64,000 bases of DNA. Source: Anthoceros angustus (taxonomy: Eukaryota; Plantae; Anthocerotophyta). Made by a program: the position numbers and the translations under genes. The stretch lies in NCBI GenBank assembly GCA_010909165.1, contig MU008168.1:124001-188000 (forward strand), given 5' to 3'. The notes beneath the pieces are model-generated. The model searched no databases. It worked only from the letters and a program-made list of their open reading frames with translations, and was not told where the DNA came from. Position 1 is the stretch's first letter. Each line of letters begins with the position of its first letter. Positions 19,801-36,938 of the stretch are shown here, piece by piece.

Positions 19801-22800
19801 GTGGAGACCGAATTGAGAGGTATGTCCCAATTGAGTTATCCAGGCTTTGGTGTAAGTCCATCGTTGTTTCCATGTTGTCTGGTCCGTTTGACAAGAGTGA
19901 TAACATTTGCTTATGTGCCACATGCAGTGGCCGTTGCCTCTGTGCACGAAGATGATGATGAGAACGAGCAGTTGCATGCTGTTATAGCTGGTGATGTTTG
20001 ACAGTACATTCGCACATTTATTTGTTATTGGTTTCACTATCACAACTAGCTAGCCTGCGCTATTTTGCCAACCACCATGTGTGCTGAGACAGTTTTATGG
20101 GGTCTGTATGCAGCACGAGATGAAAGACTAAGCACTATTGCTCTTGTTGCCCGAGCTGCTCCTGCTGCAACAGTACCCCTGCTGGCTATGCTTATCTCCG
20201 AGCGATGCTCCTGGTTGCTTCAGGTACTCATTTTTGTCGGGCTGGAATGTATCTGTACGAATCTAGGAGATTTGATTTTGATAATGGGTGATTTCCTCAG
20301 TGCATTGGAGGAATGGCGGATCCTGTATCTATACTGGAGGAGCTCCATTGGCTATTACTGATGTCTGGTCATGTGCTAGCGGACGCTGGCGATGGAGAGA
20401 CACCTTTTGTGAGTAGAGGGATTCTAAAGCCTGAACTCTGATGGAATGTTATTCTTGGGGCCAATGCCAGGCCTGATTGTGGAAAATCTTGCAGGTTCCC
20501 GAATCAATCTCGGCTCTTTACGCAAGTGGAGATGATCCAACGAATCACCCTGCCATACTTCTTTCCCAGTAAGTGACAAGGTCTCTTGCTGGCTCTCTTC
20601 TACCATTAGCATAATCTAATCTGCTGTCCAATTCGTGGTTCTCAGCTCTGTGATTGAACTAGCTCGTCAGAGCCTGGATGCAAATATACGAGCTCAAGTT
20701 TTCAGTCCTCGTTTAATGGAGGCAAGAACCACTCGACCATTCCCCCACAGATTTGACTTCTGTCTCCTAGACAATATGGATATGAGCAGGGGAAACATAA
20801 ATCGGAGTAGTAGGAATTGGATTCTCACAAATTGATTTTCTGCATTTTGTGCAGGCCCTCATATGGTTCTTTGGGAGATGGGTTGACACATACCTCATGC
20901 CAGCACATGCAGGCAGGGGCCCAAATTCCACGCCTTCTGGGCATGAGGGCGATCAGCACCTGATTGTTGCATCCAGTGCTCAATTTGATGGAAGGAATGC
21001 CCTTAATATTGCCTTTGGAGAGCAGGGTGGAGGGAAGGCTGTGCTTGAGGTGCTTGTTCGTGTCACTCTCACGGCCTTAACTGCATGGCCAGGCGAAAGA
21101 AATTTGCAGGTCAGATTTTTCTGTATTTTGTTGTTATTTTTCTGTTTCCAGGTGTTCGACTGTTGCAGATGTCATGTCATGTCATGTCATGAAGTCAGGG
21201 GCAGGTGACACTAGTAACATCTGAAGGTGTAGTTAATCACAACATCAAGCTGCTCTTCTTGAGTGCAGGAGATTGCTGCCTTTCAGTTACTGCCTCATTT
21301 GGCTCAGCGCCGCAATATATGTGTTCATCTGGTTACTATGGTAAGGGCTATGTAACGTACTGTTGGTGTGACTGGGCACATGTCCACGAGGTCTTCTCAG
21401 TTTAACTAGATACGGCGGGGTTCTCTAATAATGTTGTCTTTCTAGGATGCGTGGCAAGAGCTTGCACATGCATTTGCTTATCAGCAGCCTGTGCTTCCAG
21501 GCCTTGCAGCTGCAACCCAGGTTCATGAGTTACACTGCCGGTGGATGTTTGAAGTCGGTTAGTTTGGGCCCTCTTAGTGTTCCCATTGTAATTAGCTTTT
21601 GCCTGTTGAACCTGGACAGAGAGCGCTTTCAGAGGTTTTGTGCCGATCAGCAGCTGGCATGAGTACAGTGGATGCAACCAATCAGTGAGTACTTGGTCTT
21701 ACTAATAATGTCTGTTCTTGGGGGCTGGTCGTCGTCATTTTCACTCTCAAGCTGTTGAATATTCGGTGTTGATATGTCGGTATAGATATGTCAGAGATCT
21801 ACTGGGACCCATCACAGTAAGGATTGCAGATTTGTCCAAAAGAGAAGACTTGCAAAGCTTCTCTCAGCAACCAGATTCTATTCACCAGGTAATGGTTTGT
21901 CACTGAAGGCCTATAACCTGCCACCATCACCGATTTGTTCGACCACTTGACTCTGTCCACACACTGAACTTTACCCAACGACTGTTGTCCCATCTATCCT
22001 GCAGGTCAGTTGTTTAATGGAAAGGCTTCGAGGGGCTGCAAGGGCAACCCTTCCTCGTAGCCAAAAAGCCATTTTTGAGATGGGAGCTGCTGTTATGGAG
22101 CCTTTGCTTGTGTTGTTGCAAACGTACAAAAACCAGGTCAGGGTGGTGCTGATCAGAGTTTCCAAAAACCTTTTAGCTTTTTGTAATTGAAGCTTCTGTC
22201 ATGCTGACTCAAGATTTTTCTTGGCAGTCATCTGTAGTCTATTTGCTTCTAAAATATGTAGTGGATTGGGTTGATGGGCAAGTAGCCTTTTTGGAGCCCA
22301 AGGAAATGGCCATACTGTTCAGCTTTTGTGTTCGCCTTCTTGAGGTCTACTCTGTCCACAACATTGGGAAGGTATGTTGTTCAAACATTGCGGGGAAAAA
22401 AGGGTGGATGTAAAGGCATGCAAGTTCTAGCAGCTACTTCTGCTGATTTGTGACATTGCATTGCATTGTGACATTTGAGATGTGGTATTATCCCAACTGA
22501 GGTCACATTCTCTACCAGTGCTGGCACTGAACTCTTAAAATGCGGGTTGAAAACTGGTTTTCTACAGGTGTCAGTGTCCCCGTCTGTGAACTTGTTGAGC
22601 GAGAGCCAAAAAGAGAAGTACAAAGACCTGAGGGCTCTGCTGCAGCTTCTGACAAATTTGAGCTCAAAGGATTTGGTACGGCTACTGTTCCATATGCTGT
22701 AATCTGTTTCATGAGTCCTTGGCCAGTAGTCATGATGGGGTGGTGTTGGGTTTTGTGTCATGACAGGTCGATTTTGCTTCTGATAGTGGGGAGGATGAAA

Positions 22801-23902
22801 ATTCAGATGTTGCACAGGTACGTTTGTCTCTCACTGCTGTTTTGTGCTGGGAGAAAGTGATGAGATGCGCTCTTCAATGCTTGCGTATGAACAGAGGTTG
22901 AATCTAACCTTTTGGGGTCTGTCCTTCAGGTTGTCTACCTTGGTTTGCACATTGTTACTCCACTGTTATCCGTAGACTTGCTTAAGTACCCAAAACTTTG
23001 CCGCCAGGTTGGTGTACGTGATTTTCATGAATATCTGATGTAGTGTATGACCTTCATTAGGAATAGTGTTTGAGATCGTTTGTTTGCTGTCGTTGCAGTA
23101 TTTTACACTAATTGCACACATGCTGGAAGTATATCCACAAAAGGTAGCGAAGTTATCAATAGAAGGATTCTCTCGAATTGTTGCTACTTTGGAGTTTGGC
23201 CTAAGGCATCAGGTATTTCCCCGTTAGAAAGGTTGTATACTTGGTTCTTGCTACAGGGGTGAACGTTCTCATATTGCCCTCTTGTCGACAGGATGTCGAG
23301 GTTGTAAACATGTCATTAACAGCCCTCAATGCCGTAGCTTTCTACCACTATCAAGAGATCTGTGCTGGGAAAGAGGGCCTTGGTTTGCATGCTGTCAACA
23401 AGCAGGGAGCGGATGGAGCTCTAGAGGAGGGCGTTCTTGCCCATTTCCTTAGGGCAGTCCTGCAATACCTGCTCTTCGAGGACTACAGGTCAGTGTGTTA
23501 TTCTAGAAGCTTACTGAACCACCTCTGGATGGCACTGACGGATAAGTTGTTCTTGTGCCTGATAGTAACGAGCTGGTGGAGCCTGCCGCGGATGCGCTTC
23601 TTCCCTTGATTCTGTGCAATACTGCACTATACCAGGTGAGATTTTGAATGTCAAGATTATCCGCAGAAAGGCTTGTTTGTTCTCCACCAGTACTGATGCT
23701 TTGCAATGTGTAGAGATTTGCTCAAGAACTTCTGGAGGGGCAACAGAATGCAGTGCTTCAAAGCCGGTTGGCCACGGCGTTCCACGTTCTGTTAAATTCC
23801 AACCAGGTGACGGCATCCCTGGATCGAGCTAATAGACGCAGGTTCCGGGAGAATTTGTACTTATTTTTGTCTGACGTGCGGGGATTCTTAAGAACCAGGT
23901 AG
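16837..23902 (+). CDS. XPO4: Exportin-4 (importin-beta family), many short exons
   Basis: QAVEQACAAL, YVQAKVLAVAAVLLKRSW, SAMGLPAEFHEHCR, LMSQILNWEF, FSPRLMEALIWFFGRW, LERLRGAARA, YKDLRALLQLLTNL, DLLKYPKLCRQYF, C-terminal FLSDVRGFLRTR*; TAG at 23900-23902. Confidence 0.92.
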
Positions 23903-26359
23903 CAGTTGTCGCTGCTGTGGAAGGAAATCTCCGTCTGTACATTACATTCTGTCAATAGGTTCTCCTAGCTAATTTTTTGTCCAAACGCAGCTACCAGTGT
24001 GCTACAATCAGGCTAACAATTTTCTGCAGCCGAATGCTGGCATGCAAAAGTCGGCTTACATTGAATATTTGGACATAATGGCTATTATAGCAATGTTATG
24101 CGAGCTAGATCAATTCATGGGGTAACGCATGTCCGTAGAACCTTTCCTGTTAGATTACCTTGTACATTTTTTGAGATGAAACCAGCTTCAAACTGGATGC
24201 ATGCTAATCGTACAACCCCCATTCGAGGAGTTCTCCGTTGGAGACTTCACGTTCATCTACTCGCATTCCTGAACCAACAAAATGTATATAGTCAGATTCT
24301 AAGGACTGGAAAGCGCTGTCTAACAACGAAAAAGTAGCTACGTTCAGACACCAACATCGACAATCCATGCGACTCGTCCAGGCCGAAACCCGCAGCACCT
24401 GAATCGCTTTAGTAGCTGCACTAGCATTCCAACATATCAGCGCTGCAACAAGCTTACTTTCACACGAGCAACCCCACTTGCTGACGGGCCATCTTGACAA
24501 TCGTGCAGGGCCATTTTGACAGTTCCGTAAAAAAGTCGCTGCAACACCTTCCCAATAGCAAAACTGAACTACTTTCCAGCCATGCATGAAAAATCAAGGA
24601 AGAATGTACATAAATACTTACCTGACTTCAAAAGGGTTGGACAGGTCAGGAACAATGGCCGTTGTGCGAGCGTCTGTGCGTCAAACGCTGAACGGCTAAA
24701 AGTCTGCCCACATTACAGGCGCACCTGGCAAGTTTCCTATCCATGAGATGATCCACCACAACTCTGTACACAGAAAAGAAGCTATATTAGACAGGGTTAA
24801 CGGCCTGAAGGAGCTCTGGAACAAACCTAAATAATAGCAATTGCAATTCAATTAATCAGTAGCGGTTTCAACGCAATTCATCACCAGGTGAACACCTTCA
24901 TCGCATGAACGAACTACAAAAAAATGAGGGGTACACCTCCACAATGCAAGACTCTTGGCACCCGAACCACAAGGGAAATCTGAAAATTCATTCAGGGGAA
25001 ACATGCTGACAGACCATTGCTCATCCAATTTGGCAGAGGATTGTATTGCAGACATATGCTCTTAAACCACCATGAGGTGAGTTCTATGAGCTGGTACCAA
25101 CCAAATTATCAAAAACCCACCTCTCATGAATAAAGGCAGCTAACCTCCCAAGCTTGGACGTGATATATGCTTACATCCTTAGAGCCCACATACACAATTC
25201 TCACATGTTTAATATCTAGTAGCAAATGTGGTACAAGAACCTTAAATTGAGACAGTCTAATGAAAAAACCATCGCTCTGAGGACGCACCTCACAATGAAT
25301 ATCTTCACAAACTGCGTCCAAGCTTAGGCAAACTAAAAAGCACTAATCAAACACAGTAATGTTGTATCATCCATGAGTTTGAAACCAGAATATAACTCCA
25401 ACAGGCTGCATTACATTCCAGCCTCAAATCAGGTACTGTCAAAACTACGGATGCTGAGACACAAAAAGGAATTAAGACATACGGCAGAGCTGCACGTACT
25501 AAGTCCGATAACTGAATTATGTGAGCCAACTTCTTTAAGTACTGCTGGAATAACAAAAGAAGTCCACAAAACGAAGGCACACCTAACTACTTTGAGGTGC
25601 AACTATACACCTGGTCTCAGGAATTCCTGTGACAACATAACCTAGAAAATATTTCGTCCTCCAACTGTATCCCAGCACTTTGAACCAAAATCTTCCCGCA
25701 GTTAGCACATTGAAAAATCTGATTGCCAGTAAGACATAGTTTTGCAAAAGCACCGTGGTGAAGGATAGCAACAAAGGAGCTGAAGGACTCACATGTGAAA
25801 AATCATCGAGAACATGTTTCAGACGAATCAGCCTACGTGCGGATCAAATTGGAGACTCACGAACAAGTTTAAACCCTGGGGTATCAGCAGCTCCCACAAT
25901 GCTACTCTGTGTAATATGTGCACTGATTTAACCACTAGATGCTTGGGTTTGCACCCTCTCAGAGGACTGTCAGCCAAAGACCAAAATCCCACGTAAGTAA
26001 AAGGACTGGCCACATACGAACAAAAGAAAAAAGTCCAAACTAATCCCTACTGCCCATACTGGAGGGAGGTGAGGGGGGAAGATAAGGTTCTAGTTGTGAG
26101 ACACACTCCTCATCCTATATGACTCTGCGATCTACCCTATTACTGTGATCACTAACATGAGGTGACTATGACTTCAAATTCATTGTCTACAGCAGACTAT
26201 ATGAGTTAGGGTGGGCACTAAGGTTCCAAACTTACAATCCTTTAAAACGAGCTGCAACTCCCTATATCAGGTACCTACACCGTAATCTGCATTGGGGTTC
26301 CAGGGTCTCGCTGACGAGGTAGGGATTTGAATATGGGGATACATGAGCCTTACAACAAT

Positions 26360-29300
26360 CTAGTAAGGCCGATACACTCTACTGTCACTGTGATGCCATC
26401 TAGTAGGGCCAACACCCCCTGAAAGATTCTGTTGTGAAGGCTGCTGCTGATGAGGCTGTTGATGAGACTGCTGTTGATGAGGCTCATGTTCTCCCCTCTT
26501 CAATTCCACCTTGATACGCTTGCCCAGAAGGAGCATACCATTGACTTGCTGGATGGCTGCCTCAGCAGCTTTAGAAGAATCCATTGATACAAAACCTGCT
26601 TAAGATCATCAAATGCAGTGACCAAACAGGCTAGGATTTTAAGTGCAAAAAGGACAATAGAGAACACCAATCCCCAAAGAAAAACTCAAACAGGTATTAC
26701 TGTTCACGCAAAGCACAGACTAGAGGTGGATAATCTGGACGGCCCCCATGATCTGACACCTTCCTGTGCCTGCTGAGATACAGCTAACAGCATATGCTAA
26801 ATGACGACATAGTTGTCAAGAGGAAGTAACCTCTAGCTGCCATGAAGTAGCATTCTGAGGTGCAAAACAAACTAAAAGATTATCTCACTGCACGCAACTG
26901 TAATAACTACGACGAACAAGTGGAACACACCACTGCAGACAACACTGCACAATTTCCACAGAACATCAATCACCCTCTTGTGTCGTACTTTAGCACTACT
27001 ACATCAGGTCCAGTTTGGGTACATTTCTAGCATCTGAGCCAATGCAGTAACAAAATGCCAAGACTCTGCACCTGAACCAAACACTGGTGAGCTTGTCAAT
27101 GGACTGAACTACATTGAGAACCAGCTGATTCCCAGTGTGAACGAGCTGTTCCCATGTGACACAATCCCTTGCTGCAAGGGTTTCAAGCCTGCTGCTACCC
27201 AAACAGACGATCCTAATGCAGACATGGAAAGTTTTGTCTAATAAAAAATAGCATTAGTGGACAACCCAGCAATGAGTGTGCAAGAAGTTGAAGTCCTATC
27301 AAGAATTTCAAAGCAGTGACGCCTAGCCACACGGGACTTCACCTACTGTCTGGTGTTTAAAGGTCGGGACGCAATACCAGCTTATCAGACAGATTAAGAC
27401 AACATCCACCATTCAGAAAAGAACATAACACAAACAATCAAGGAAGCTGGCACCGTTTTCACCTGCAACCTATCATTGTCCCAAGCACCAGCACCAACAA
27501 CTAAAAACCTCTCTCTGAGATAGAGAGCAAGGGAAGGAAAAACTGTGAGCAGGGAGAGTTATTTGGATCACTCATTGGCCCTACGGTTAGGACTTGAAAG
27601 TGTTTTCCTTCTAGAATATGTCCAGGCTGACCATGGATATGCACAACATTGAAGGACACAACAGTGAGTGACACTACCGAAATAAAAGCAAACATTGCTT
27701 ACCATAGCCTTTCCCTCGCCCTGTCTCTTTCTCAACTCCAACTTTGGCGTACAAAACAGTGCCATAAGGAGTGAACAAATCTGCGAGTTTCTGATCACCC
27801 ATATCTTCAGGAATACCAAAAACAAACAAATTTGCACCTGCAGAGCAAATCTTGGTCAGCACATTTTCTTACCAGTGCAGTACAAAACCACATGGCTACT
27901 TCGAGTGTACCTTGCGGGCCACTTGTAGGCGCAGAGGACGAGACAGGGGCCGGAGGCTTTGAAGGAGGGGGTGTGTGAACAGGAGGCCTTTGATGAATGA
28001 TAGGGGGTGCAGACACTGATGACATTAAAAGGAAGTGAGCTAAGCAACAACAACAAATAGACTGCCGGCAATGAAGAATTTCAGAACAGAAAAAATGTGC
28101 TGCCATATACCATGAGGTCCATGTGGTGGCTGTTGCAGTGTGTGGGGAGGAGCCGCCAACAAAGGTGCAGAACCTTGAGAAGCCATGTGTGGGGTTTGTG
28201 TCATAGGATGTGTTTGGACAGGAGGGCCCCCAACTGGGTTTGGCTGAAGAGGCCTGGGAATCAACTGAGGCTGCGACACTGGCTGAGGCAAAGGACCTCG
28301 GGAGGGATGCTGCATTGCATGCGGAATTGGGGCCAACCCGTGAAGTTGACCAGGACGAGGCAATGGAAGAGGCAAAGGGCGAGGCATTAGCGCACCTTGC
28401 ATGGTGTGTGGCAGGGGACACGGTGCAGATTGCTGCATTTGTGCCCCTGGCTGCTGCAATTGTCCCTGGAGAGGCTGCATCTGACCCTTCGCTGACTGTT
28501 GTGCTTGGCTCTGGGCAGGCTGTGTAAGATGAACCTGAGGAGATTGGTTTTCCTGTTTCAATTGGCCAGAAACAGCTTGCGGCAGCTGGCTTGTGCCATT
28601 TTGACCCTGCAACCCTTGACCTGGAATTGACTGCTGCATTTGAGTTGGCCCTGAGGACTGCAGATGCACCGGTCCAGACTGTGATTGTGGAGGGTGATGC
28701 ATCTGTGCCTGGTTGAAATGTTGTGCTGCTTCTGCAGCAATCAAAGCAGCGGGCTTTTCCCACTGAGTGACTCCTGTGGTTGGATTGTGATAGAAAGGCC
28801 TGCCACTGGGAGCCTCATGCACAGTCCACTCCTCAGCAGGTTTGCTTTCTGCTGCAGCCCTAAACTGATCTTGAGAAGCAGCAAGTGGGGCCTGATAGTG
28901 GTTCTCTTGCCCAGGGTACTTCGCAGTATCTGTCACACCCTTGTAGTCACTATCGCCTGAGCCTTGGCCATTTGCCATTGCAGGCGCTTCCTGCAAATGG
29001 ACAGAATAAAGAATACATTTCAGTTAGAAAAGAGACCTGCCAACACAGATATCCAAACATGCAAATCCGTACGCATCAAAATAGAAGTCAGATATCACAA
29101 CAGTGTGGAAAAATGGACAAGATCAGATGCCACAACGTTGTGGAACAATAGACAAGATTTAAAACTGAAGTCCTGGGACTCACACACTTCGGTCGTAGAT
29201 CAGTTCAAAGCAAGGACTCAATCCAAGCCGCAGTAACTGACCCGGCCATATACTAGGGCTAATGGCTGATTGGAATCTCCAATTTCAGAGACCAGACTAT

Positions 29301-32300
29301 ATACAAACAAGTTGACGGGCTACTTTGAAAGAGGGACCTCCATGTTGCTTCATGAAGCAACAGATGCATGTGGCAAATTAAAAAGCTCCATGAGCCAGAG
29401 GACGTGTCATAATGCAATGCACATGGTCCCTTTTACTGCGGAGCAGCAACAAGAAACATCTCATCGGATATCATACAGGGATCATGGTAACAAAAATGAA
29501 GTAGGGAACCTGTGAGCATCATACGAACCTTCCACTGCATCTACTGGGTCATACAAAGTTGGTCCCATGTTACCATTGACCTAAATGGGCTTATTTGGTC
29601 ATCCAAATAAAGTCTCGAAAGGAGACCTTTCCACTTATCTTTTTCAGATTAAATGCACCAAGAATTGTACTAATCATTTGCATGCAAGTAAGGCCACGAA
29701 ACAGAAAACAAGACGAAAAAAAGGTTTTCAATCATGAATTTTAAGCAATCCCACTGCCGTTTACTGTGGACAAACTTTATAAGCACTTTCAGCAAACAAA
29801 TTACAGTTCACACATCAGCAGATAGAATCGGTCAGTTGCTTTAGCAATATCTAGCAACACACCAATCCGCAAGACTTTGAACACCTATCACCTTAGACTT
29901 TGGTGCTTTAACTGGAATGAAACCTCACAGCTTTAAGCCTTCCCAGCAAGTAAACAAATAAAACTTACTGCGACCGCCAAGCTCCATGCATGGACCTGAG
30001 AGTTGACAAAAGATTACCTACTTTGTCAAAAACTCATACAAGATGCATGGAGCCTACACACACATCTTGTGAGATGTGAAACATCCCCTCATCTAAAACG
30101 CACAAAGACTGAAACAACAAGAAACAATCCCGGCAGACAATGTCTCTGTGCTATTTGGTGGTACACCCATCTAAACCTTACTGGAAGTCAAATGTTAAAA
30201 TCACAGTCCTCCACAACAGAGGAACGTTGTCCAATCTGGACAGGCACTCTGAACAACGGCATATACAACTATCACCACACGACAGAAGCATGACAGTATC
30301 CACTTCAAGCACTTCAGAGAAAAAATAACGGCCTACATTTCCACTGGGGGAAGGCTGATAGAAGAACTTAGCCACAAGAAAGATAAACGAGGGGTCACAT
30401 TGCAAGCCTGACAGATTTATAATTCTAACAGCATTAACAACAAGGAAGAAGATCTGGAGTACGGGCCTAGAGAGATCTAGGCAGAAAGGCAATCCAAACT
30501 AAAATAAGGAATTATGTAGCCATTTACACAATAAAAACTAGACTCAGTACACTGGTCACCTGGATGCAAACGTCAAGACAAGACATCAGACAACAATCAG
30601 TGACACATGCAAAACACCACAAACTGATGTTGACTAAAGTAATCCACCATTTCGCATTCATAAGACTTGACTTCAAAGAAAGTTATTTCAGAATTGGAGA
30701 TCACTATGTACCCAAGAAATATGCAAAACACACCACCAGCCGGGAGTGCACCACACAACTCGTCTTCCATGGCAAGTCTCTTTTTCTTGTAAGGGTGGAA
30801 CATTCCTGACCTGATCTTGTCCTTGAGCAGCTACCAAAGCAGTTTTTCTTCTTGTGCGAAATTATATCCAGTCTTGTGCTTACATTCAAGTCAGACCTTA
30901 GATTTCTAGGCTAATTTCACCAGGCATAATCCCAAACTAGTTGATGCATCTACACTAAGTTCATCACTATCACTCTGCTAGTTGGGATACAATGCTACAG
31001 CTACTGCGCTTAAAGTACAGCACACCAGGATTAAAGCACAAGCACTGATATTATAAGTGTCTGACCTAAAGAAGTACAGCTTATGAGTTTGCCTGCTGTG
31101 TCAGTGCCATGACAAACAGAAAACATAACACAAATACAAGTGCAAAGCGGTCTCTACAAGTGGTACAAATGGATTGTTTATTACAATTCCAAGTTCTCTG
31201 TACGGTTTTTGGCAAGTTCCTTGTTGCAGATACTCAACAGAAAGCATGACAGAACCAGACAGCATGGACTCTGGACAACTACAGCTATGTAAGCAAACAT
31301 TAGGTGAAGACACTACAGATGCATACATACTAGGAAACAAAATTCTGTATGCAGATAGATGTATCATATATGTATTTAAATATATACACTGCCATAGGGG
31401 TTTAATTTTCATCAAATATCCACTACACACAACCAAGACCTCATTTTGACTGAGGCTGGGTCTTGGGAGGTATTTTCACATGATTACAGCAAATAACAAG
31501 GGATACTCGATCTGCTGTACATTGCACATTGACGGATTGCTTCCACTCAAGTTTGTTGCTAGACTAAGCATGGACTGAAACCTATCTAGCATATGGATTG
31601 ACATCCGATACAGACTCATAATGTGTGGTGTTCAGTCAGCATGCAACACAAATGCTTTCCACTATTGAAAGTCACGAACCATTCATGAGAATTCTAGGAC
31701 ATAACACATGCTTCATTGTGACTCGAAATAAAGGAAAGTGACGATCCTAGCAGACCATGTTAATTTCTGACCACACAGGATAACCATGTTTGGGAGCAAG
31801 TCATGGGAGACAAGATAAGTGATTACAGACAAGTCATGGGAGCAAGAGTGCCATCAAGTTTCTTCTCAATCACCAGAAGCAATGCTCATAGTTGGGATAA
31901 CATTCTATATAGACCGACAACTGCAGGAGAAGGATGCCTGCTCACGACTATCATGCCTCGGCTCTCCCTCTCTAAGCAGGAGTCCTAAATGGGTCCTAAA
32001 GATGTCACAATACTCTCACTCTCACAGAAAAACAGAAGACATGCAAGCAGAGACTTAAAGCACCCAAGAGGTAAAACTTCAACTATGACAGATGCCCTCA
32101 ACAATGTCCGTTCTAAAGAAACCTGCTATTGCTCTAGACCACCTATGTCAAAATATACACAAACACAACTACTTTGTAAAGCTTGTCGGAAATGGGTGCT
32201 TGTACCACAGCTGCTCAATATCCTAACAAAAATGCCCTGGCTCATCTACGTACATGAGGAATGCCAGTGCGCTGTAACTCATAAGCTCCCCATGCAGTAT

Positions 32301-33918
32301 TTGGACCAGTGGAATACTGCACACCGTTTTCCACCGCTACTGGCATCTGAAAGAAAGAGGGGCAACAAAAACTATCAACATATCCAATCCCACACGGAAC
32401 CTACTACAACTGTGCAATCAGTTCATTTGAGCTTGTTGAACCATCCCTCTATTTCAATGGATGATTTGACATAGATGTTTGAGGTTCAAGTTGGCGAAAA
32501 TCTCATCCAAATCAGTTCACCAAGAACAGACAAATATATCACTCAGAGCACAGTTGATTTCAAAACAAGATTGACATATGCTTCATCAGCAGCAGCATGG
32601 AATTCTTAGCGACAATGGACATAAAAGAAACTTGTAAAGTCTCCACGTTCTAGGACCTGAAGTCAGAGCGTACTTGGCTAAGACTCTTTTCATGCTAAGA
32701 ATGACCACAAGAGGGAAAGGGCAATGCAAGGATAGCCTCTTTCACATGCACTAAGGAGACACTCCCTTATCAATCCGAATGGAGACCTGAAGCTACCAGC
32801 TCACAAACTCTAGAGCTACACTAGAGTTACTATAGTTGGTGGAAAAGTCAGACTAACCTGGTGTATGCCGTAGCCATCAGCATAAATTCCCTGAGGTACA
32901 GATCCATAGGACGGAATATCTGAAGCAGCATATCCCCCGTTGTAAGTCCCAACAGCTGTGAGAGAGACGAACTGTAAGACAGGCTAAGAACAATGCTCAA
33001 TTCTGCAGATAGAAGAACCAAACTTGCACTCGGGTCACCAGTAGTAGTGTTGACACGGGCTCTCTTCTCCGCATTTGTTAATTCTGCACGCAGCTTTTCA
33101 ACCTCTCTTGCCATTGAAACCAGATTTTTCTCCATTGCTTGTCTCTGTTCTAGCTGTTCACTGTTTGCTTTTTTCTCATAATCAAACGCCGTCCTAGGTG
33201 AACACAGGAGCAGTGTCATGAAAGTTCCATCCAAATTTCTGAGCTTCTGGATTAGTCCCATTCCAGGACAACTAAGAGGCTGCAAGGTGAAACCGAATCT
33301 CTGGGAAAAGGCAACAGGCATGAGCATATCTTAGTAGTACCTTGCTCTCTGCAGTTCTTGTCGTAACCCTTCAATCTCAGTCCTGAGAGCAGGTACTTGC
33401 TGACCATCAGAGCGTAGCCTTTGTAGTTCTGCTGTGACCTGCTGGACCTGCTGCACAAGATCTGATCTCAAAGCATGAAGCTTTTGGTTCTCGGCCCGCA
33501 GCTGCAAAACATCAGACTTGATTGCCTCAGAGGATCTGAGTTCCGCTTCCTGTTTGTTAGTCTTATCAACAAGCATGCTTATTTGTCGCTCCTTCTCAGA
33601 CTGAAGTCCTTGCAACATCTGTTGCAACCGCTGCAACTCTTGTTGTGCAGCTGCAAGCTCTTGCCTAAGGGCCACATGAGTAGCCGCTAGCCGCTGGTTT
33701 TCTGTCAAAAGCCTTTGAATCTCAGCATGCTGTGTGGCGATCTTCTGCTCTAGGATGATAGGAGGAGCACCACCCATTACTTGCTGAGGCGTAACTATCT
33801 GCGGCCGAACTTGATACGGACCGCCTGGTCCAGGACGCATAATGCCGGGGCCTGGAGGAGGGCCTCTGACACCAGGATTGATTATATGCGGAGGAGGCAT
33901 CCTGGACCTTCCAGCCAT
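26360..33918 (-). CDS. FLX-like coiled-coil protein fused to a WW domain, a Q/P-rich low-complexity region and a CELF/BRUNO-like RRM (728 aa); exons 33918-33341, 33193-33039, 32955-32858, 28990-28111, 28015-27911, 27837-27703, 26595-26360
   Basis: FLX motifs [33 protein letters not shown] and [28 protein letters not shown]; [28 protein letters not shown]; [18 protein letters not shown]|[20 protein letters not shown]; C-terminal YRPY. All six introns are GT-AG with matching phases; 2187 nt in total. The join across 32857-28991 is inferred; the two halves are individually more certain. Confidence 0.75.
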
Positions 33919-34274
33919 ACAAGACTTGGAGAGAGCCTCTCAGGTCAGCCTGTCGAGAAAAACACAGGAAAACATATTGTGAAAAAAGCTGAAGAGGCAA
34001 CCAAAAAGGCCTCCCTCCTAACTACCAAACATGAGTAACTCCCACCTACTGTGCAATCACGATGGCATTGCTCGACCAGATCATTATCTCCGCCGCTGTA
34101 CGTTACGTACCCTTGGATATACTGAGTCACGTCATGATCACCACGCTCAGGTAAAGACGATAGCACTAGCTCGGCCTACTGACAGGTACTAACAATGAAA
34201 GCCAACTCAATTGTGCTATAAACAAGCACGAACAGGGTTGTCATGCCAAGTTTCACAGTCACTAATTCTCTGGA

Positions 34275-34332
34275 CACACACACCCAGACTCTCACACACA
34301 AACACACACAAACACACAAACACACACACAAC
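34275..34332. repeat. Interrupted (CA)n/(TG)n microsatellite upstream of the FLX-like start codon
   Basis: cacacacacccagactctcacacacaaacacacacaaacacacaaacacacacaca. Confidence 0.8.
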
Positions 34333-34937
34333 ACCGATTCCTGGAACACGCACTGCATCGAATCAAGACGTCGCAATGGATACCTTGAAAGCATGCACGA
34401 AAACGATAACCAATCACGGAAACAAGAGCTTTCAGAGAAGCAAAGGGTGTGAGAAAGTACCAAGGCAGCAGAGGGGCCGATCCCGGTCAGGATGCCGCAA
34501 AAGCCGGAAAGGACAAGTGGAAAAATGCCAAATCGGAGAGCGATGTGATTGAGCCTCAGGGGCTGGACGCCACAACCGGTCCGGGAGAGAAGGGAGGCCT
34601 ACGCCTACGCCAACTGGGGGGAGCAACAACCAGGCCTGGCCCTGCCGCAGAGAGCATGCACCGAGCGTGGAGGTGGTTAGCGTTGTTGCCCTAACCGCAG
34701 TCCGCCCATTGCCCGTTTTTACACTGCCTTCCCCAAACGGAAAGATCTGTACATATGTGGGTGCCCCTGCCCTGCGCAGTCCACTGTGGCTGCCGCTCCC
34801 GCTGCCGGGTTGGTTGTTGTGGGTTGGTTCATACAGGGTGCGGTTGCAGCAATTCTACCGACTCTCGACTCACTGGCTGCGTTTACGGACCTAGACAAGC
34901 GAGTCTAGTCTCTGTAATCCAGTCCTTCGTGCGAGAA

Positions 34938-36938
34938 ATGGAAAAAATGGTGGCAACCGCTGTTCCTTGCACTTGGTCCCGGGCCTGGGCCTGGGGCTGG
35001 CCCCGGCCCGCGCTGCCCAAGCAGCGCCTGCGCCTAGGCGTGCACGTGACGAAATGGGGAGCAGGCAGACGAGGTGCCGTCTCGGCACACGCTGTGGGCG
35101 GCAGCATTGCCCGCAGGCCGTACACTGCTGTTCTGATTGTGCCCACAGGCACGGGAGCCAGCATCGGTGGGTACGCGGGGGACGCGCTCCCGGTTGCCCG
35201 AGCCATGGCCTCGGTCGCCGACTGCCTCATCACCCACCCCAACGTGGGATTCAACTCCCCAGCCTCCTGTCCTGCCTGTTTTTGTGGGCGTTACTGGATG
35301 CAAGGAGCTGCCGGCTCACGCGTGGATGGATGGCTGGTGTGCGCAGGTGCTGAACGGAGCGATGTTGTACTGGCCGCTGCCCAACGCGCTCTACGTGGAA
35401 GGTTACGCTCTGGACCAGTTTGCAGCAGGGGGATGGGGTCTTGTGCCTGTGCATCAGAACAGAGTGGGTAAAGGTAGTGGAGGGGAGTGTGGTGGTCATC
35501 CCCTGCTGCCGGACCTGCCCTGCGCTCCTTCTGACCAGCAGCTGCGTCTCCCTTGCGTGAATCGCAGGTTGGTCTGATTCTGGATGCCGGTATAGAGGAG
35601 GAGCTGCGGCTGCGGCACCTCCAGGTTGCCGATGCTGCGCGGGCCACGTTGGGTCTGCCTGTGCTGGAGTACGCTGTTACGGACAAGCCACTGCAGGTGC
35701 CTGCCTTGCTTTGTCCCTCTGTGTCCGTGTCTGTGTCCGTCTCCGTCTCCGTCTGTTTGGCACTTTGGTGCGTTTCGGCGCTGGTTGCCGATGAAGCGAA
35801 GACCTGATCGGTGTAGGTCGAGAAATGGGTCGACCGGAAGACGGGAGCGTCTACTGGCCGGCTGGGGCAACCTGATTCACTTCTGCGAGCCGTGGATGGC
35901 TTGATCAAGAGTAGCGGAGTTGATGCAGTTGCAGTGGTGGCGCGCTTCCCTGATGACTCTTTAGATGAACTGGAGGATTACAGGCAAGGCCAGGTTGGTG
36001 GTGCGGTGTCCTTGCACACTCTTGCTAACTCAGCAGCTCCACTATGCTTCATTTTCTGCCCGTGCACTGCACAGGGTGTCGATGTCTTGGCCGGAGTCGA
36101 GGCGATCATCAGTCACATGGTGGTGAAAGAGTTCGGGATACCTTGCGCCCATGCGCCTGCTTTGTCTCCCTTGCCGTTTGATGCTTCCATCTCACCTCGA
36201 TCTGCAGCAGAGGAGGTCTGTCTGTGTTTCAGTCCCGGTGAAGAGTTGTGGGGATCTAGCAAATGGGCCTGCTTCACATGTTATCTATTTTGGCTGCAGC
36301 TAGGGTACACGTTTCTTCCATGCGTCCTGGCTGGGTTGAGCAATGCCCCCCAGTTTTCAAGGAAGGAGGATTCCCTTCTCCCCGGAAGAACCAGTGGAAG
36401 GAGCATCTGGGCAGATGATGTGGACTGTGTGATCGTACCGGGAAACGCATGTGGAGGTGCTGGAACTCTAGCTTTTTGCAGCCAGAGAGTGCGGAAGGTA
36501 CAATTTTCCCACGGGCCTCACTTAACTCTTCTTCCTTGTTTCTCTCGCGTGCGACCAGACCCTCACACCCATATAAATGCTTCCCCTCTCTATTATGTGT
36601 AACAGCCTTTGCTGATAGCCGTGGACGAGAATGAAACGGTTCTTGACGATACTCCAGAGAAGTTGAATTTGGATGCGGTGAGAAATTCTTTGATGCAGCA
36701 AGTAAGAAAAAGTCCAGCTTGATTACATCTCCACTTTGCTCACACTGTAACTGAACAGGTCAAGGTCGACAACTACTTGGAAGCTATCGGTGTGATGGCT
36801 GCACACAAAGCTGGAGTTAAGTACGCTACCTTACGTCGGAAAGGGGTACAGCACTTGCAACGGTGTCGTTTGCCTGATGGGTTGGACAGGACAGGTTCAG
36901 CACAAACTGCGGCATCGCAGTATGTCCTGATCACGTGA
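34938..36938 (+). CDS. DUF3326 protein (homologue of cyanobacterial syc1174-like proteins), probable plastid transit peptide, 8 exons
   Basis: YTAVLIVPTGTGASIGGYAGDALP, LITHPNVLNGAMLYW, LYVEGYALDQFA, GLILDAGIE, YRQGQGVDVLAGVEAIISH, PCAHAPAL, PRSAAEELGYTFLPCVLAGL, NYLEAIGVMAAHKAG; TGA at 36936-36938. Confidence 0.9.

What the first reader, a model, noticed from the sequence alone, without database searches (positions are those of the whole stretch)
26360..33918. Rosetta-stone fusion: FLX coiled coil + WW + Q/P-rich region + CELF-like RRM in one spliced gene
Seen: the third FLX-like exon ends ..YGIHQ at a phase-0 GT donor (32857) with no stop codon before it. A phase-0 AG acceptor at 28991 opens EAPAMANGQ.., which leads to a WW domain, a ~230-aa Gln/Pro-rich tract, an RRM and a terminal YRPY (PY-NLS-like). 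The seven exons total 2187 nt (728 aa). Established: Arabidopsis FLX-family proteins are stand-alone coiled coils, and FLL2 promotes condensation of FCA (RRMs + prion-like region + WW) with 3'-end-processing factors. Inference: this single protein may combine the condensate scaffold, a polyproline-binding WW (FCA's WW binds FY) and an RNA reader. It would then be an ancestral or lineage-specific one-protein version of that system in a non-flowering plant. The domain order and the CELF-RRM3-like RRM differ from FCA. I cannot check here whether this architecture has already been reported.
Basis: partly seen in the sequence, partly recalled or inferred. Interest (0 to 1): 0.85.

Follow-up and report, generated by a model that had tools for sequence, protein, structure and literature searches.

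The report
Ancient FLX–WW–RRM fusion gene, hornwort
This hornwort gene really is spliced into one 728-residue protein that joins an FLX-type coiled coil to a WW domain, a Gln/Pro-rich tract and an RNA-binding domain; the same fusion exists from stonewort algae to ferns but was not found in seed plants and has not been described in any paper I could search.

Summary
Observation confirmed. Every junction inside the laid stretch, including the 3,867-nt FLX|WW intron, is present in spliced transcript contigs of four related species.

The fusion is not lineage-specific. Collinear FLX + WW + Q/P + RRM + PY proteins occur in Chara, Spirogloea, Nothoceros, Physcomitrium, Ceratodon, Selaginella, Psilotum and Pteridium, under uninformative names. 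None was found in seed plants, and no searchable paper mentions it.

The canonical FLX C-terminal exon (32346-32242, ending HVRR-stop) survives inside the big intron. It is the best-conserved piece of the locus against a second hornwort (89.5% nt, versus 73-76% for exons 2 and 3). It also has an internal phase-0 donor that fern/lycophyte-clade transcripts use as a cassette. It is probably an alternative exon, but no spliced read shows its use here.

The WW-RRM half is a CELF/FCA-type module (WW + RRM3 + PY), not an FCA orthologue. The condensate/Rosetta-stone function remains inference.

The parts
33341..33918 (-). Exon 1: ATG at 33918, Pro/Gly-rich N-terminus, then the first about 145 residues of the FLX-type coiled coil
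   Evidence: 141 hits. The named ones are stand-alone FLX-like proteins of 270-330 aa, at 50-56% identity in non-seed plants and gymnosperms; joint to exon 2 in contigs of all four runs.
33039..33193 (-). Exon 2: end of the FLX coiled coil (..[19 protein letters not shown]..)
   Evidence: joints 33192|33340 and 32955|33039; collinear with FLX-like and fused homologues.
32858..32955 (-). Exon 3: Tyr/Gly-rich FLX linker ending ..YADGYGIHQ at a phase-0 donor
   Evidence: The donor CACCAG|GT is conserved in L001. The joint to the WW exon is present in four runs.
32242..32346 (-). E4alt: the canonical FLX-like C-terminal exon (34 codons + TGA) inside the big intron. It is skipped in the observed mRNA and is probably an alternative exon.
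   Evidence: it aligns to the last 30-36 residues of stand-alone FLX-likes, up to their final residue (motif W-GAY[ED]-xQR..H[VA]RR-stop); 94/105 nt identical to L001, against 72/98 for exon 3 and 117/155 for exon 2; 6 synonymous and 4 non-synonymous codon changes; stop kept in place (TGA to TAA).
32254..32346 (-). E4': the 93-nt cassette version of E4alt, ending at an internal phase-0 donor CAT|GTACGT (GT at 32253-32252), 9 nt before the stop
   Evidence: Sequence; the donor is conserved in L001. P0124, P0126 and P0166 carry the homologous segment in frame and continue into the WW exon exactly here (..SH|EPVSRINGQ). No read shows its use in this species.
32347..32387 (-). Conserved intronic block upstream of the E4alt acceptor: a branch-site-like TTGAT plus a polypyrimidine tract, U/G-rich
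   Evidence: 35/41 identical to L001, while the rest of the intron does not align.
28991..32857 (-). 3,867-nt intron between the FLX half and the WW-RRM half
   Evidence: skipped in contigs of four runs, with only low-depth unspliced patches inside; no Rfam family and no repeats.
28111..28990 (-). Exon 4: opens EAPAMANGQ; holds the WW domain (28834-28751) and most of the Gln/Pro-rich tract
   Evidence: WW 2.1e-10; nearest solved WW domains are PRP40A, TCERG1 and FBP11. One search gives the composition.
27911..28015 (-). Exon 5: Pro-rich segment with the conserved motif [13 protein letters not shown]
   Evidence: joints on both sides; the motif is conserved in moss and hornwort proteins and recognisable in the vascular-plant transcripts P0124 and P0126.
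27703..27837 (-). Exon 6: first half of the RRM (RNP2 LFVFGI, RNP1 KGYG..)
   Evidence: RRM_1 1e-7; 63-87% identical to fused homologues.
26360..26595 (-). Exon 7: second half of the RRM, a His/Gln-rich tail, GPTRW, terminal YRPY (26374-26363) and TAG (26362-26360)
   Evidence: loose ends at 27701/27703 in X1-X3 read into this exon; the C-terminal PY is conserved in fused homologues from Chara to ferns.
24696..24763 (-). Alternative downstream exon joined to the exon-6 donor. It would replace the second RRM half by 22 residues and a stop (TAG 24698-24696).
   Evidence: second loose end at 27703 in all four runs; the loose sequence matches 24763-24739 exactly; acceptor tgtacag|AG.

Best explanation
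SHOWN. The locus is one seven-exon gene of an Anthoceros-type hornwort. Its main mRNA encodes a 728-aa protein with these parts, in order:
- a Pro/Gly-rich N-terminus;
- an FLX-type coiled coil;
- a Tyr/Gly linker;
- a PRP40/TCERG1-like WW domain;
- a 242-aa Gln/Pro-rich, nearly uncharged tract;
- a CELF-RRM3-like RRM;
- a C-terminal R-x3-PY.

It belongs to an old, unnamed streptophyte family with the same collinear architecture and the same junction position. Members occur from Chara to ferns. None was found in seed plants.

INFERRED (mechanism).
- The protein is imported into the nucleus through the PY motif.
- It self-associates through the coiled coil and the prion-like Q/P tract.
- It binds U/G-rich RNA through the RRM.
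- It docks on proline-rich partners, such as splicing or 3'-end factors, or its own PLPLPLP/PPPxP stretches, through the WW domain.
- In short, it would be a multivalent nuclear RNA-processing scaffold.

INFERRED (isoform switch). The locus is also a switch. The canonical FLX last exon, kept under strong constraint inside the 3.9-kb intron, can probably be used in two ways. As a terminal exon it would give a stand-alone FLX-like protein. As a 31-codon cassette, through its internal donor, it would lengthen the fusion. A second alternative event after exon 6 removes half of the RRM.
For: Gene structure:
- Spliced contigs in four runs carry the fusion joint and the other internal joints.
- All splice sites are canonical and the frame is intact.
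- The same layout, with an open frame across the junction, is present in a second hornwort contig, L001.

Family:
- Full-length fused proteins exist in Physcomitrium patens (XP_024370313, 804 aa). The index lists its exact ORF in 103 collection blocks whose longest contig is 2-5 kb; one such transcript-sized contig (L005, 2,936 nt) carries the whole ORF uninterrupted.
- Others are Ceratodon KC19_4G227100, Selaginella XP_002974282, Psilotum, Pteridium, Chara GBG78372 and Spirogloea.
- An FLX-type N-terminus was confirmed in all of them by phmmer with exon 1. WW plus one RRM was confirmed by Pfam.
- The WW+RRM tree puts the fused proteins on one side of a branch (support 90/79). Land plants score 99/94 and vascular plants 95/86.

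Domains.

E4alt:
- It is homologous to canonical FLX C-termini.
- It is 89.5% identical in nucleotides to L001, against 73-76% for exons 2 and 3 (the other exon blocks align at 68-80% by blastn), and the rest of the intron does not align.
- It has fewer synonymous changes than exon 3 (6 in 34 codons against 15 in 32).
- The acceptor, branch region and stop position are conserved.
- The cassette use of the homologous donor is visible in P0124, P0126 and P0166.

RRM-truncating isoform. It parallels P. patens isoform X2, which ends right after the same exon.
Against: - No spliced read or contig shows E3-E4alt or E4'-WW in this species. The E4alt region is covered only unspliced and at low depth (9.4 against 116, and 2.6 against 90.6), like other intron patches.
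- The runs are labelled 'RNA?' by guess, although the removed introns show the contigs are cDNA-derived.
- Contigs cannot rank isoforms and they drop rare variants.
- The moss gene has lost E4 altogether: the intron is about 673 nt with no E4-like ORF. A switch is therefore not essential to the family.
- Every functional statement (nuclear location, oligomerisation, RNA and ligand specificity, condensates) is untested. The coiled-coil homodimer prediction gave no verdict.
- Absence from seed plants rests on searches whose top lists are crowded by multi-RRM proteins.
Confidence: 0.75

Rival explanations
1. There are two separate genes: a four-exon stand-alone FLX-like gene ending at 32242 and a WW-RRM gene starting at the MANGQ Met. 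On this view the fusion is a read-through or an assembly chimera.
For: E4alt is an intact canonical FLX end with a strong acceptor. This was my own first hypothesis. A Nothoceros Trinity ORF (P0122, 462 aa) is labelled 'complete' and holds only WW + RRM.
Against: The exact E3|WW joint is in the dominant contig of four runs from four organisms. There is zero depth just upstream of the WW exon and no E3-E4alt joint. The junction frame is conserved in L001. Fused mRNAs or models exist in at least eight other genera. The Met is not conserved in mosses (EAGPASNG..). P0122 starts at an internal Met and retains the RRM intron.
Confidence: 0.03
2. E4alt is only a relic. The locus makes just the fusion, and the exon's conservation reflects something other than coding use, for example an intronic splicing or transcription element.
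For: No spliced use is seen. Mosses do without it. Its synonymous sites are unusually conserved, which points to nucleotide-level constraint as well as protein-level constraint.
Against: The reading frame, the stop position (TGA to TAA), the acceptor and the branch region are all kept between hornworts that differ at about 25% of exon positions. The encoded peptide still matches the family-wide C-terminal motif. The homologous segment is coding in fern/lycophyte-clade transcripts.
Confidence: 0.2
3. The protein is the ancestral single-chain form of the FCA + FLL2 pair, which later split into the two seed-plant genes (a strict Rosetta-stone fission).
For: In Arabidopsis, FLL2 (an FLX-like coiled coil) drives FCA (RRMs + WW + prion-like region) into nuclear bodies (PMC10811348, PMC8037041). 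The fusion was not found in seed plants. In the WW+RRM tree the nearest full-length outgroup is a plant three-RRM protein with a WW between RRM2 and RRM3 (Sphagnum KAH8959343).
Against: That sister relation is weak (74/64). The fusion has no counterpart of FCA's RRM1 and RRM2, and FCA lacks its RRM3-PY. FCA-like genes are reported in mosses alongside the fusion (PMC1939987). RRM-RRM-WW-RRM and WW-RRM proteins exist in a glaucophyte and an oomycete, so the WW-RRM3 module predates plants. Stand-alone FLX-likes already coexist with the fusion in Chara.
Confidence: 0.1

Closest known systems
FLX-like family (FLC EXPRESSOR, FLL1-4; Arabidopsis FLL2)
   Same: Exons 1-3 are 50-56% identical to named stand-alone FLX-like 1/3 proteins of ferns, lycophytes and gymnosperms. 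They share the [27 protein letters not shown] core. The locus still carries the family's canonical last exon.
   Different: The observed mRNA skips that last exon and continues into WW, Q/P tract and RRM: 728 aa against about 285-325 aa. No role in FLC or FRI-type regulation can be assumed in a hornwort.
FCA (Arabidopsis flowering-time RNA-binding protein)
   Same: Both combine a WW domain, a long Gln/Pro-rich low-charge region and RRM-type RNA binding. FCA functionally depends on an FLX-like coiled-coil protein (PMC10811348).
   Different: FCA has two N-terminal RRMs followed by the WW (PMC1939987). Here there is no RRM1/2, the WW precedes a single RRM3-type domain, and a coiled coil is attached covalently. 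It is not an orthologue.
CELF/Bruno-like proteins, including forms with a WW between RRM2 and RRM3
   Same: The RRM is closest to CELF1/2 RRM3 among solved single RRMs. The C-terminal PY is like that of a CELF-like three-RRM protein of a ciliate (P0298, ends ..HAPY). The WW-linker-RRM3 order is shared with Sphagnum KAH8959343 and with glaucophyte and oomycete proteins. RefSeq even names the Selaginella member 'CUGBP Elav-like family member 1'.
   Different: RRM1 and RRM2 are replaced by an FLX coiled coil.
Unnamed database members of the same fusion family: Physcomitrium patens XP_024370313 / A0A7I4DI24, Selaginella XP_002974282, Chara braunii GBG78372, Ceratodon KC19_4G227100
   Same: Collinear FLX + WW + Q/P + RRM + PY. 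The same exon-3|WW junction residue pattern (..YG.H.Q|EA..) is seen in the moss, hornwort and Psilotum members. The RRM is split by an intron at the same place.
   Different: The hornwort gene keeps the canonical FLX last exon in a 3.9-kb intron, whereas the moss intron is about 673 nt without it. The Q/P tract is shorter than in mosses. The database names ('WW domain-containing', 'tyrosine-protein phosphatase non-receptor type 23-like') hide the architecture.

Membership tests
FLX-like (FLC EXPRESSOR) family | Conserved N-terminal coiled-coil region with the [14 protein letters not shown] core | tested here: met
   E down to 6e-49 against named FLX-like proteins at 50-56% identity; collinear tblastn over exons 1-3.
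FLX-like (FLC EXPRESSOR) family | Small stand-alone protein (about 250-330 aa) ending in the W-GAY[DE]-xQR..H[VA]RR motif | tested here: not met
   The observed mRNA skips the exon that encodes this end (32346-32242) and gives 728 aa. The exon itself is intact, so a stand-alone isoform is possible but not shown.
FCA | Two N-terminal RRMs followed by a WW domain | tested here: not met
   the only RRM is C-terminal to the WW, and exons 1-3 are coiled coil. The definition is taken from PMC1939987.
FCA | WW domain binds the PPLPP motifs of FY | not testable with these tools
   The WW is intact (both Trp residues, aromatic core, terminal Pro), but the nearest solved relatives are PRP40A and TCERG1. 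No binding test was possible.
CELF/Bruno-like | Three RRMs, with RRM3 at the C-terminus | tested here: not met
   Only the RRM3-like domain and the terminal PY are present.
Streptophyte FLX-WW-RRM fusion family (unnamed) | Collinear FLX coiled coil, one WW, a Q/P-rich tract, one RRM and a C-terminal PY | tested here: met
Streptophyte FLX-WW-RRM fusion family (unnamed) | WW+RRM module monophyletic with the other fused proteins | tested here: inconclusive
   the fused proteins are one group at 90/79, below the tool's strong mark. The hornwort was represented by Nothoceros P0122, because the window's split RRM was not joined.
PY-NLS cargo | C-terminal R/H/K-x(2-5)-PY preceded by a basic or hydrophobic patch in a disordered tail | tested here: met
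   The sequence ends ..[13 protein letters not shown] and the PY is conserved from Chara to ferns. Import itself was not tested.

The most novel reading that the evidence does not exclude
The ancestral streptophyte FLX gene was a two-output locus. An alternative last exon or cassette (E4) would choose between a free FLX coiled-coil scaffold and the same scaffold covalently tied to a WW/prion-like/RRM RNA reader. Stand-alone FLX-like genes would then have been spun off repeatedly from this locus. This fits the finding that the fused and free FLX parts of Chara, and of mosses, are each other's closest relatives. Seed plants would have kept only the free form, so that the Arabidopsis FLL2-FCA partnership is the non-covalent remnant of an ancient covalent one. 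The hornwort gene would be a living intermediate that still encodes both outputs.
Probability: 0.25. Interest if true: 0.8.

Novelty: new variant of a known kind. Interest (0 to 1): 0.6.

Why it matters
FLX-like proteins are known only as small coiled coils of flowering-time control. One of them, FLL2, is needed for the RNA-binding protein FCA to form nuclear condensates.

This work shows that most non-seed streptophytes carry an FLX coiled coil welded to a WW domain, a prion-like tract and a CELF-type RRM. That gives an evolutionary argument that FLX-type scaffolds and WW/RRM RNA-processing proteins are old functional partners.

It also offers tractable systems (Physcomitrium, Anthoceros) in which to test scaffold-plus-client condensate logic within one polypeptide.

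The conserved canonical exon inside the fusion intron is a concrete candidate for an isoform switch between the scaffold alone and the scaffold plus reader.

Finally, the work corrects misleading database names: 'tyrosine-protein phosphatase non-receptor type 23-like' and 'CUGBP Elav-like family member 1'.

Tried and rejected
1. My first reading was that the FLX gene ends at E4alt and that WW-RRM is a separate gene. The spliced contigs rejected this.
2. P0122 (Nothoceros, 'complete' 462-aa WW+RRM ORF) was considered as evidence for a stand-alone WW-RRM gene. I rejected it because it starts at an internal Met and reads into the retained RRM intron.
4. The coiled-coil homodimer prediction (residues 48-192 of exon 1, two copies) gave no verdict. 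The score was 0.40 and one control scored 0.43. It is evidence neither way.
5. The bacterial promoter/terminator scan downstream of E4alt is irrelevant for a plant.
6. An Rfam scan of 24000-34500 found nothing, and a repeat scan of the intron found nothing.
7. A search for an E4-like ORF in the P. patens E3-WW intron found nothing.
8. A careful FLX-part tree did not return, so a quick LG+G4 tree was used instead. It does not resolve which seed-plant FLX subfamily is closest.
9. Fang et al. 2019 (PMC6625965) is not held, so reviews were cited instead.
10. Literature searches for FLX-like together with WW domain or RRM found no description of the fusion.


Full report
**What is in the sequence**

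On the minus strand between 33918 and 26360 there are seven open exon segments with canonical GT-AG borders: 33918-33341, 33193-33039, 32955-32858, 28990-28111, 28015-27911, 27837-27703 and 26595-26360. They add up to 2187 nt, that is 728 codons plus TAG.

- Exon 3 ends ..YADGYGIHQ at a phase-0 donor (GT at 32857-32856).
- The next used acceptor is AG at 28992-28991, which opens EAPAMANGQ in phase 0.
- Pfam finds a WW domain (2.1e-10) in the 880-nt exon.
- Pfam finds the two halves of one RRM_1 in the last two exons (1e-7 and 2e-3).
- Between WW and RRM lie 242 residues that are 40% Gln+Pro and 4% charged.
- The protein ends ..SRVYRPY.

**Is it one transcript?**

My first suspicion was that it is not. 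At 32346-32242, inside the 3,867-nt 'intron', there is a further exon with an excellent acceptor. It encodes 34 residues ([22 protein letters not shown]) and a stop.

Stand-alone FLX-like proteins of mosses, lycophytes, ferns and gymnosperms align to it with their last 30-36 residues, up to their final residue. That looked like a normal four-exon FLX-like gene followed by a separate WW-RRM gene.

The read evidence overruled this. Logan contigs of four runs from four related organisms were laid on 27650-33450.
- The run from the window's own species gave a 1,982-nt contig with no mismatch.
- All four runs contain the joint 28989|32857, which skips 3,867 nt with GT..AG on the minus strand.
- The other internal joints are each seen in three or all four runs: 33192|33340, 32955|33039, 28015|28111 and 27835|27909.
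- The last junction, 27703|26595, appears as a loose end.

Removed introns mean these contigs derive from RNA, whatever the run label says. Depth is zero for about 780 nt upstream of the WW exon, so there is no sign of an internal start. The extra exon is covered only by low-depth unspliced patches (9.4 against 116, and 2.6 against 90.6), like several other patches in the intron.

The fused mRNA is therefore real and is the dominant assembled form. All searches were made exon by exon, by reference, or with database proteins.

**Which organism?**

The closest named relative of the WW-RRM half is a transcript of the hornwort Nothoceros aenigmaticus. Other agents' notes on this genome call it Anthoceros, probably A. 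angustus.

A 22.9-kb contig of a second hornwort-like species (L001) has the same layout and the same neighbours on both sides. It is 85% identical in amino acids in exon 1 and 63% in the WW exon.

**The fusion is old and widespread**

I searched with the Nothoceros protein and then with a profile of the WW-to-C-terminus half against 1.8 billion representatives. Names were looked up for the relevant hits. The searches recovered collinear proteins in:
- Physcomitrium patens (XP_024370313 / A0A7I4DI24, 804 aa);
- Ceratodon purpureus (KC19_4G227100);
- Selaginella moellendorffii (XP_002974282, named 'CUGBP Elav-like family member 1');
- Psilotum nudum;
- Pteridium aquilinum;
- Chara braunii (GBG78372);
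- Spirogloea muscicola.

Several unnamed transcript-derived proteins were also found (P0124, P0125, P0126, P0144, P0166).

All have an FLX-type N-terminus, as shown by phmmer with exon 1 (E from 1e-13 to 1e-52). All those tested have one WW and one RRM. They map exon for exon onto the window.

In the moss, hornwort and Psilotum members the junction residues are of the same type, for example ..YGDSYGMHPQ|EAGPASNG in Physcomitrium.

The index lists the exact P. patens 804-aa ORF in 103 collection blocks whose longest contig is 2-5 kb, and one transcript-sized contig (L005, 2,936 nt) carries the whole ORF uninterrupted.

A maximum-likelihood tree of WW plus RRM (127 columns) gave these results:
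- The fused proteins fall on one side of a branch (support 90/79).
- The two algae lie outside a land-plant group (99/94).
- A vascular-plant group (95/86) contains Selaginella, the two ferns and the three unnamed proteins.

That pattern indicates vertical descent from a fusion older than land plants.

No seed-plant member appeared in either search. This suggests loss, but the profile's top list is crowded by multi-RRM proteins, so absence is not proven.

No searchable paper combines FLX-like with a WW domain or describes the fusion.

**What the halves are related to**

The FLX half is an ordinary FLX-like coiled coil, 50-56% identical to named FLX-like 1/3 proteins.

The RRM's nearest solved single domains include CELF1 and CELF2 RRM3 (E 2e-15 to 7e-15). 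The WW's nearest solved relatives are PRP40A, TCERG1 and FBP11.

The profile search also brought up proteins with RRM-RRM-WW-RRM architecture. They include Sphagnum fallax KAH8959343, the glaucophyte Gloeochaete and unnamed transcriptome proteins. Short WW-RRM proteins such as that of the oomycete Peronospora appeared too. So WW-linker-RRM3-PY is a module older than plants.

In the tree the nearest full-length outgroup of the fusion family is the Sphagnum three-RRM protein, but only weakly (74/64).

FCA is defined by two N-terminal RRMs followed by a WW, and FCA-like sequences are reported down to mosses (PMC1939987). The fusion is therefore a relative of the CELF/FCA world, not an FCA orthologue, and it coexists with FCA-like genes.

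Against L001 the extra exon (E4alt) is the best-conserved piece of the whole locus.
- It is 94/105 nt identical, against 72/98 for exon 3 and 117/155 for exon 2. The remainder of the intron does not align at all.
- Ten codons differ, 6 synonymously and 4 not, compared with 15 and 7 in the similarly sized exon 3.
- The stop is kept in place (TGA against TAA).
- The 41 nt upstream of the acceptor are 35/41 identical. They include a branch-site-like TTGAT and the pyrimidine tract.

Low synonymous change together with conserved flanks is the usual signature of a regulated alternative exon.

There is more. Nine nucleotides before the stop lies CAT|GTACGT, a good phase-0 donor conserved in L001. Splicing there would give a 93-nt cassette (32346-32254) that stays in frame with the WW exon.

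Three vascular-plant transcripts (P0124, P0126, P0166) contain exactly this. They have an E4-like segment (..SWGGAYDSQQIITSH) followed directly by the WW-exon start (EPVSRINGQ..). The Chara protein also seems to keep an E4-like stretch.

The moss gene, in contrast, has only a 673-nt intron with no E4-like ORF.

My reading is that E4 belonged to the ancestral fusion gene. In this hornwort it is still functional, either as an alternative last exon (free FLX-like protein), as a cassette, or both. Its use is not shown here, so I give it about 0.7 for 'functional exon'.

**A second alternative event**

All four runs show a second loose end at the exon-6 donor. Its sequence matches 24763-24739, downstream of the normal stop and behind an acceptor tgtacag|AG.

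This junction would replace the second half of the RRM by 22 residues and a stop.

Related events occur in other species:
- P. patens RefSeq isoform X2 ends right after the same exon.
- Intron-retaining forms at this intron occur in Nothoceros and in a metatranscriptome protein.
- The truncated Ceratodon model reads into the same intron.

Interrupting the RRM at this intron is thus recurrent and may be regulatory.

**How it probably works (inferred)**

- The R-x3-PY end suggests transportin-type nuclear import.
- The coiled coil and the uncharged Q/P tract give self-association and multivalency.
- The RRM has intact RNP1 and RNP2 and is of the U/G-binding CELF-RRM3 type.
- The WW is of the PRP40/TCERG1 type, which docks on proline-rich splicing and transcription factors. 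The protein also carries its own proline stretches.

Together this looks like a nuclear RNA-processing scaffold.

The Arabidopsis finding that the FLX-like protein FLL2 drives FCA into nuclear bodies (PMC10811348, PMC8037041) makes the Rosetta-stone idea attractive, but nothing here tests it. A homodimer prediction for the coiled coil gave no verdict.

**An extra evolutionary hint**

In a quick tree of the FLX part, fused and free FLX sequences group by lineage.
- Chara fused groups with Chara free (SH-aLRT 100).
- Moss fused groups with the free Ceratodon protein (99).
- The fern-clade fused proteins form their own group (99).

This fits repeated spawning of free FLX-like genes from the fusion locus, or gene conversion. 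It does not fit one ancient split. The tree is shallow evidence: LG+G4, no bootstrap, and one long-branch warning.

**Verdict**

It is wrong if read as an FCA ancestor, and it is untested as to function.

The gene is a member of an undescribed but database-present streptophyte family, and here it retains a probable isoform switch.

Noticed in passing
window 27703 -> 24763 (minus strand); exon 24763 to about 24622, in-frame stop 24698-24696: An alternative junction from the exon-6 donor to a downstream exon is seen as a loose end in all four runs. It cuts the RRM in half and adds 22 residues. P. patens isoform X2 (P0155) ends after the same exon. Intron-retaining forms occur in Nothoceros and in a metatranscriptome protein, and the truncated Ceratodon model reads into the same intron. 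This may be a conserved, perhaps autoregulatory, RRM-disrupting event.
   Followed up: partly
FLX-part tree: P0191/P0120 (Chara); P0127, P0151, P0125 / P0002 (mosses): The fused and stand-alone FLX coiled coils of one lineage are each other's nearest relatives (SH-aLRT 100 and 99). This suggests repeated fission or duplication from the fusion locus, or gene conversion.
   Followed up: partly
window 32347-32387 (minus strand): A U/G-rich 41-nt block upstream of the E4alt acceptor is 35/41 conserved with L001. It contains UGUU repeats of the kind CELF-type RRMs bind, so the protein might regulate its own exon choice. This is pure speculation.
   Followed up: no
window about 35116-36862 (plus-strand gene) and 22001-23902: Both neighbours are syntenic with L001 (65-78% nt identity). 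The upstream divergent neighbour matches ORFs that carry Pfam DUF3326 in L001. The downstream one appears to be a convergent plus-strand gene.
   Followed up: partly
window about 34230-34330: An imperfect (TG/CA)n-type microsatellite (gtgtgtgtctgtgtg..) lies about 300-400 nt upstream of the gene's ATG.
   Followed up: no
Database records XP_024370313 (P. patens) and XP_002974282 (S. moellendorffii): The RefSeq names 'tyrosine-protein phosphatase non-receptor type 23-like' and 'CUGBP Elav-like family member 1' are misleading for these FLX-WW-RRM proteins. The Ceratodon model KC19_4G227100 is truncated inside the RRM intron.
   Followed up: partly
window 29828-32462, patches inside the intron: Low-depth unspliced contig patches recur at similar places in different species: about 30500-30900, 31000-31270, 31530-31900 and 32120-32460. 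The 3' ends at 32120/32121 coincide in two runs, about 120 nt after the E4alt stop, which could be a poly(A) site or chance.
   Followed up: no
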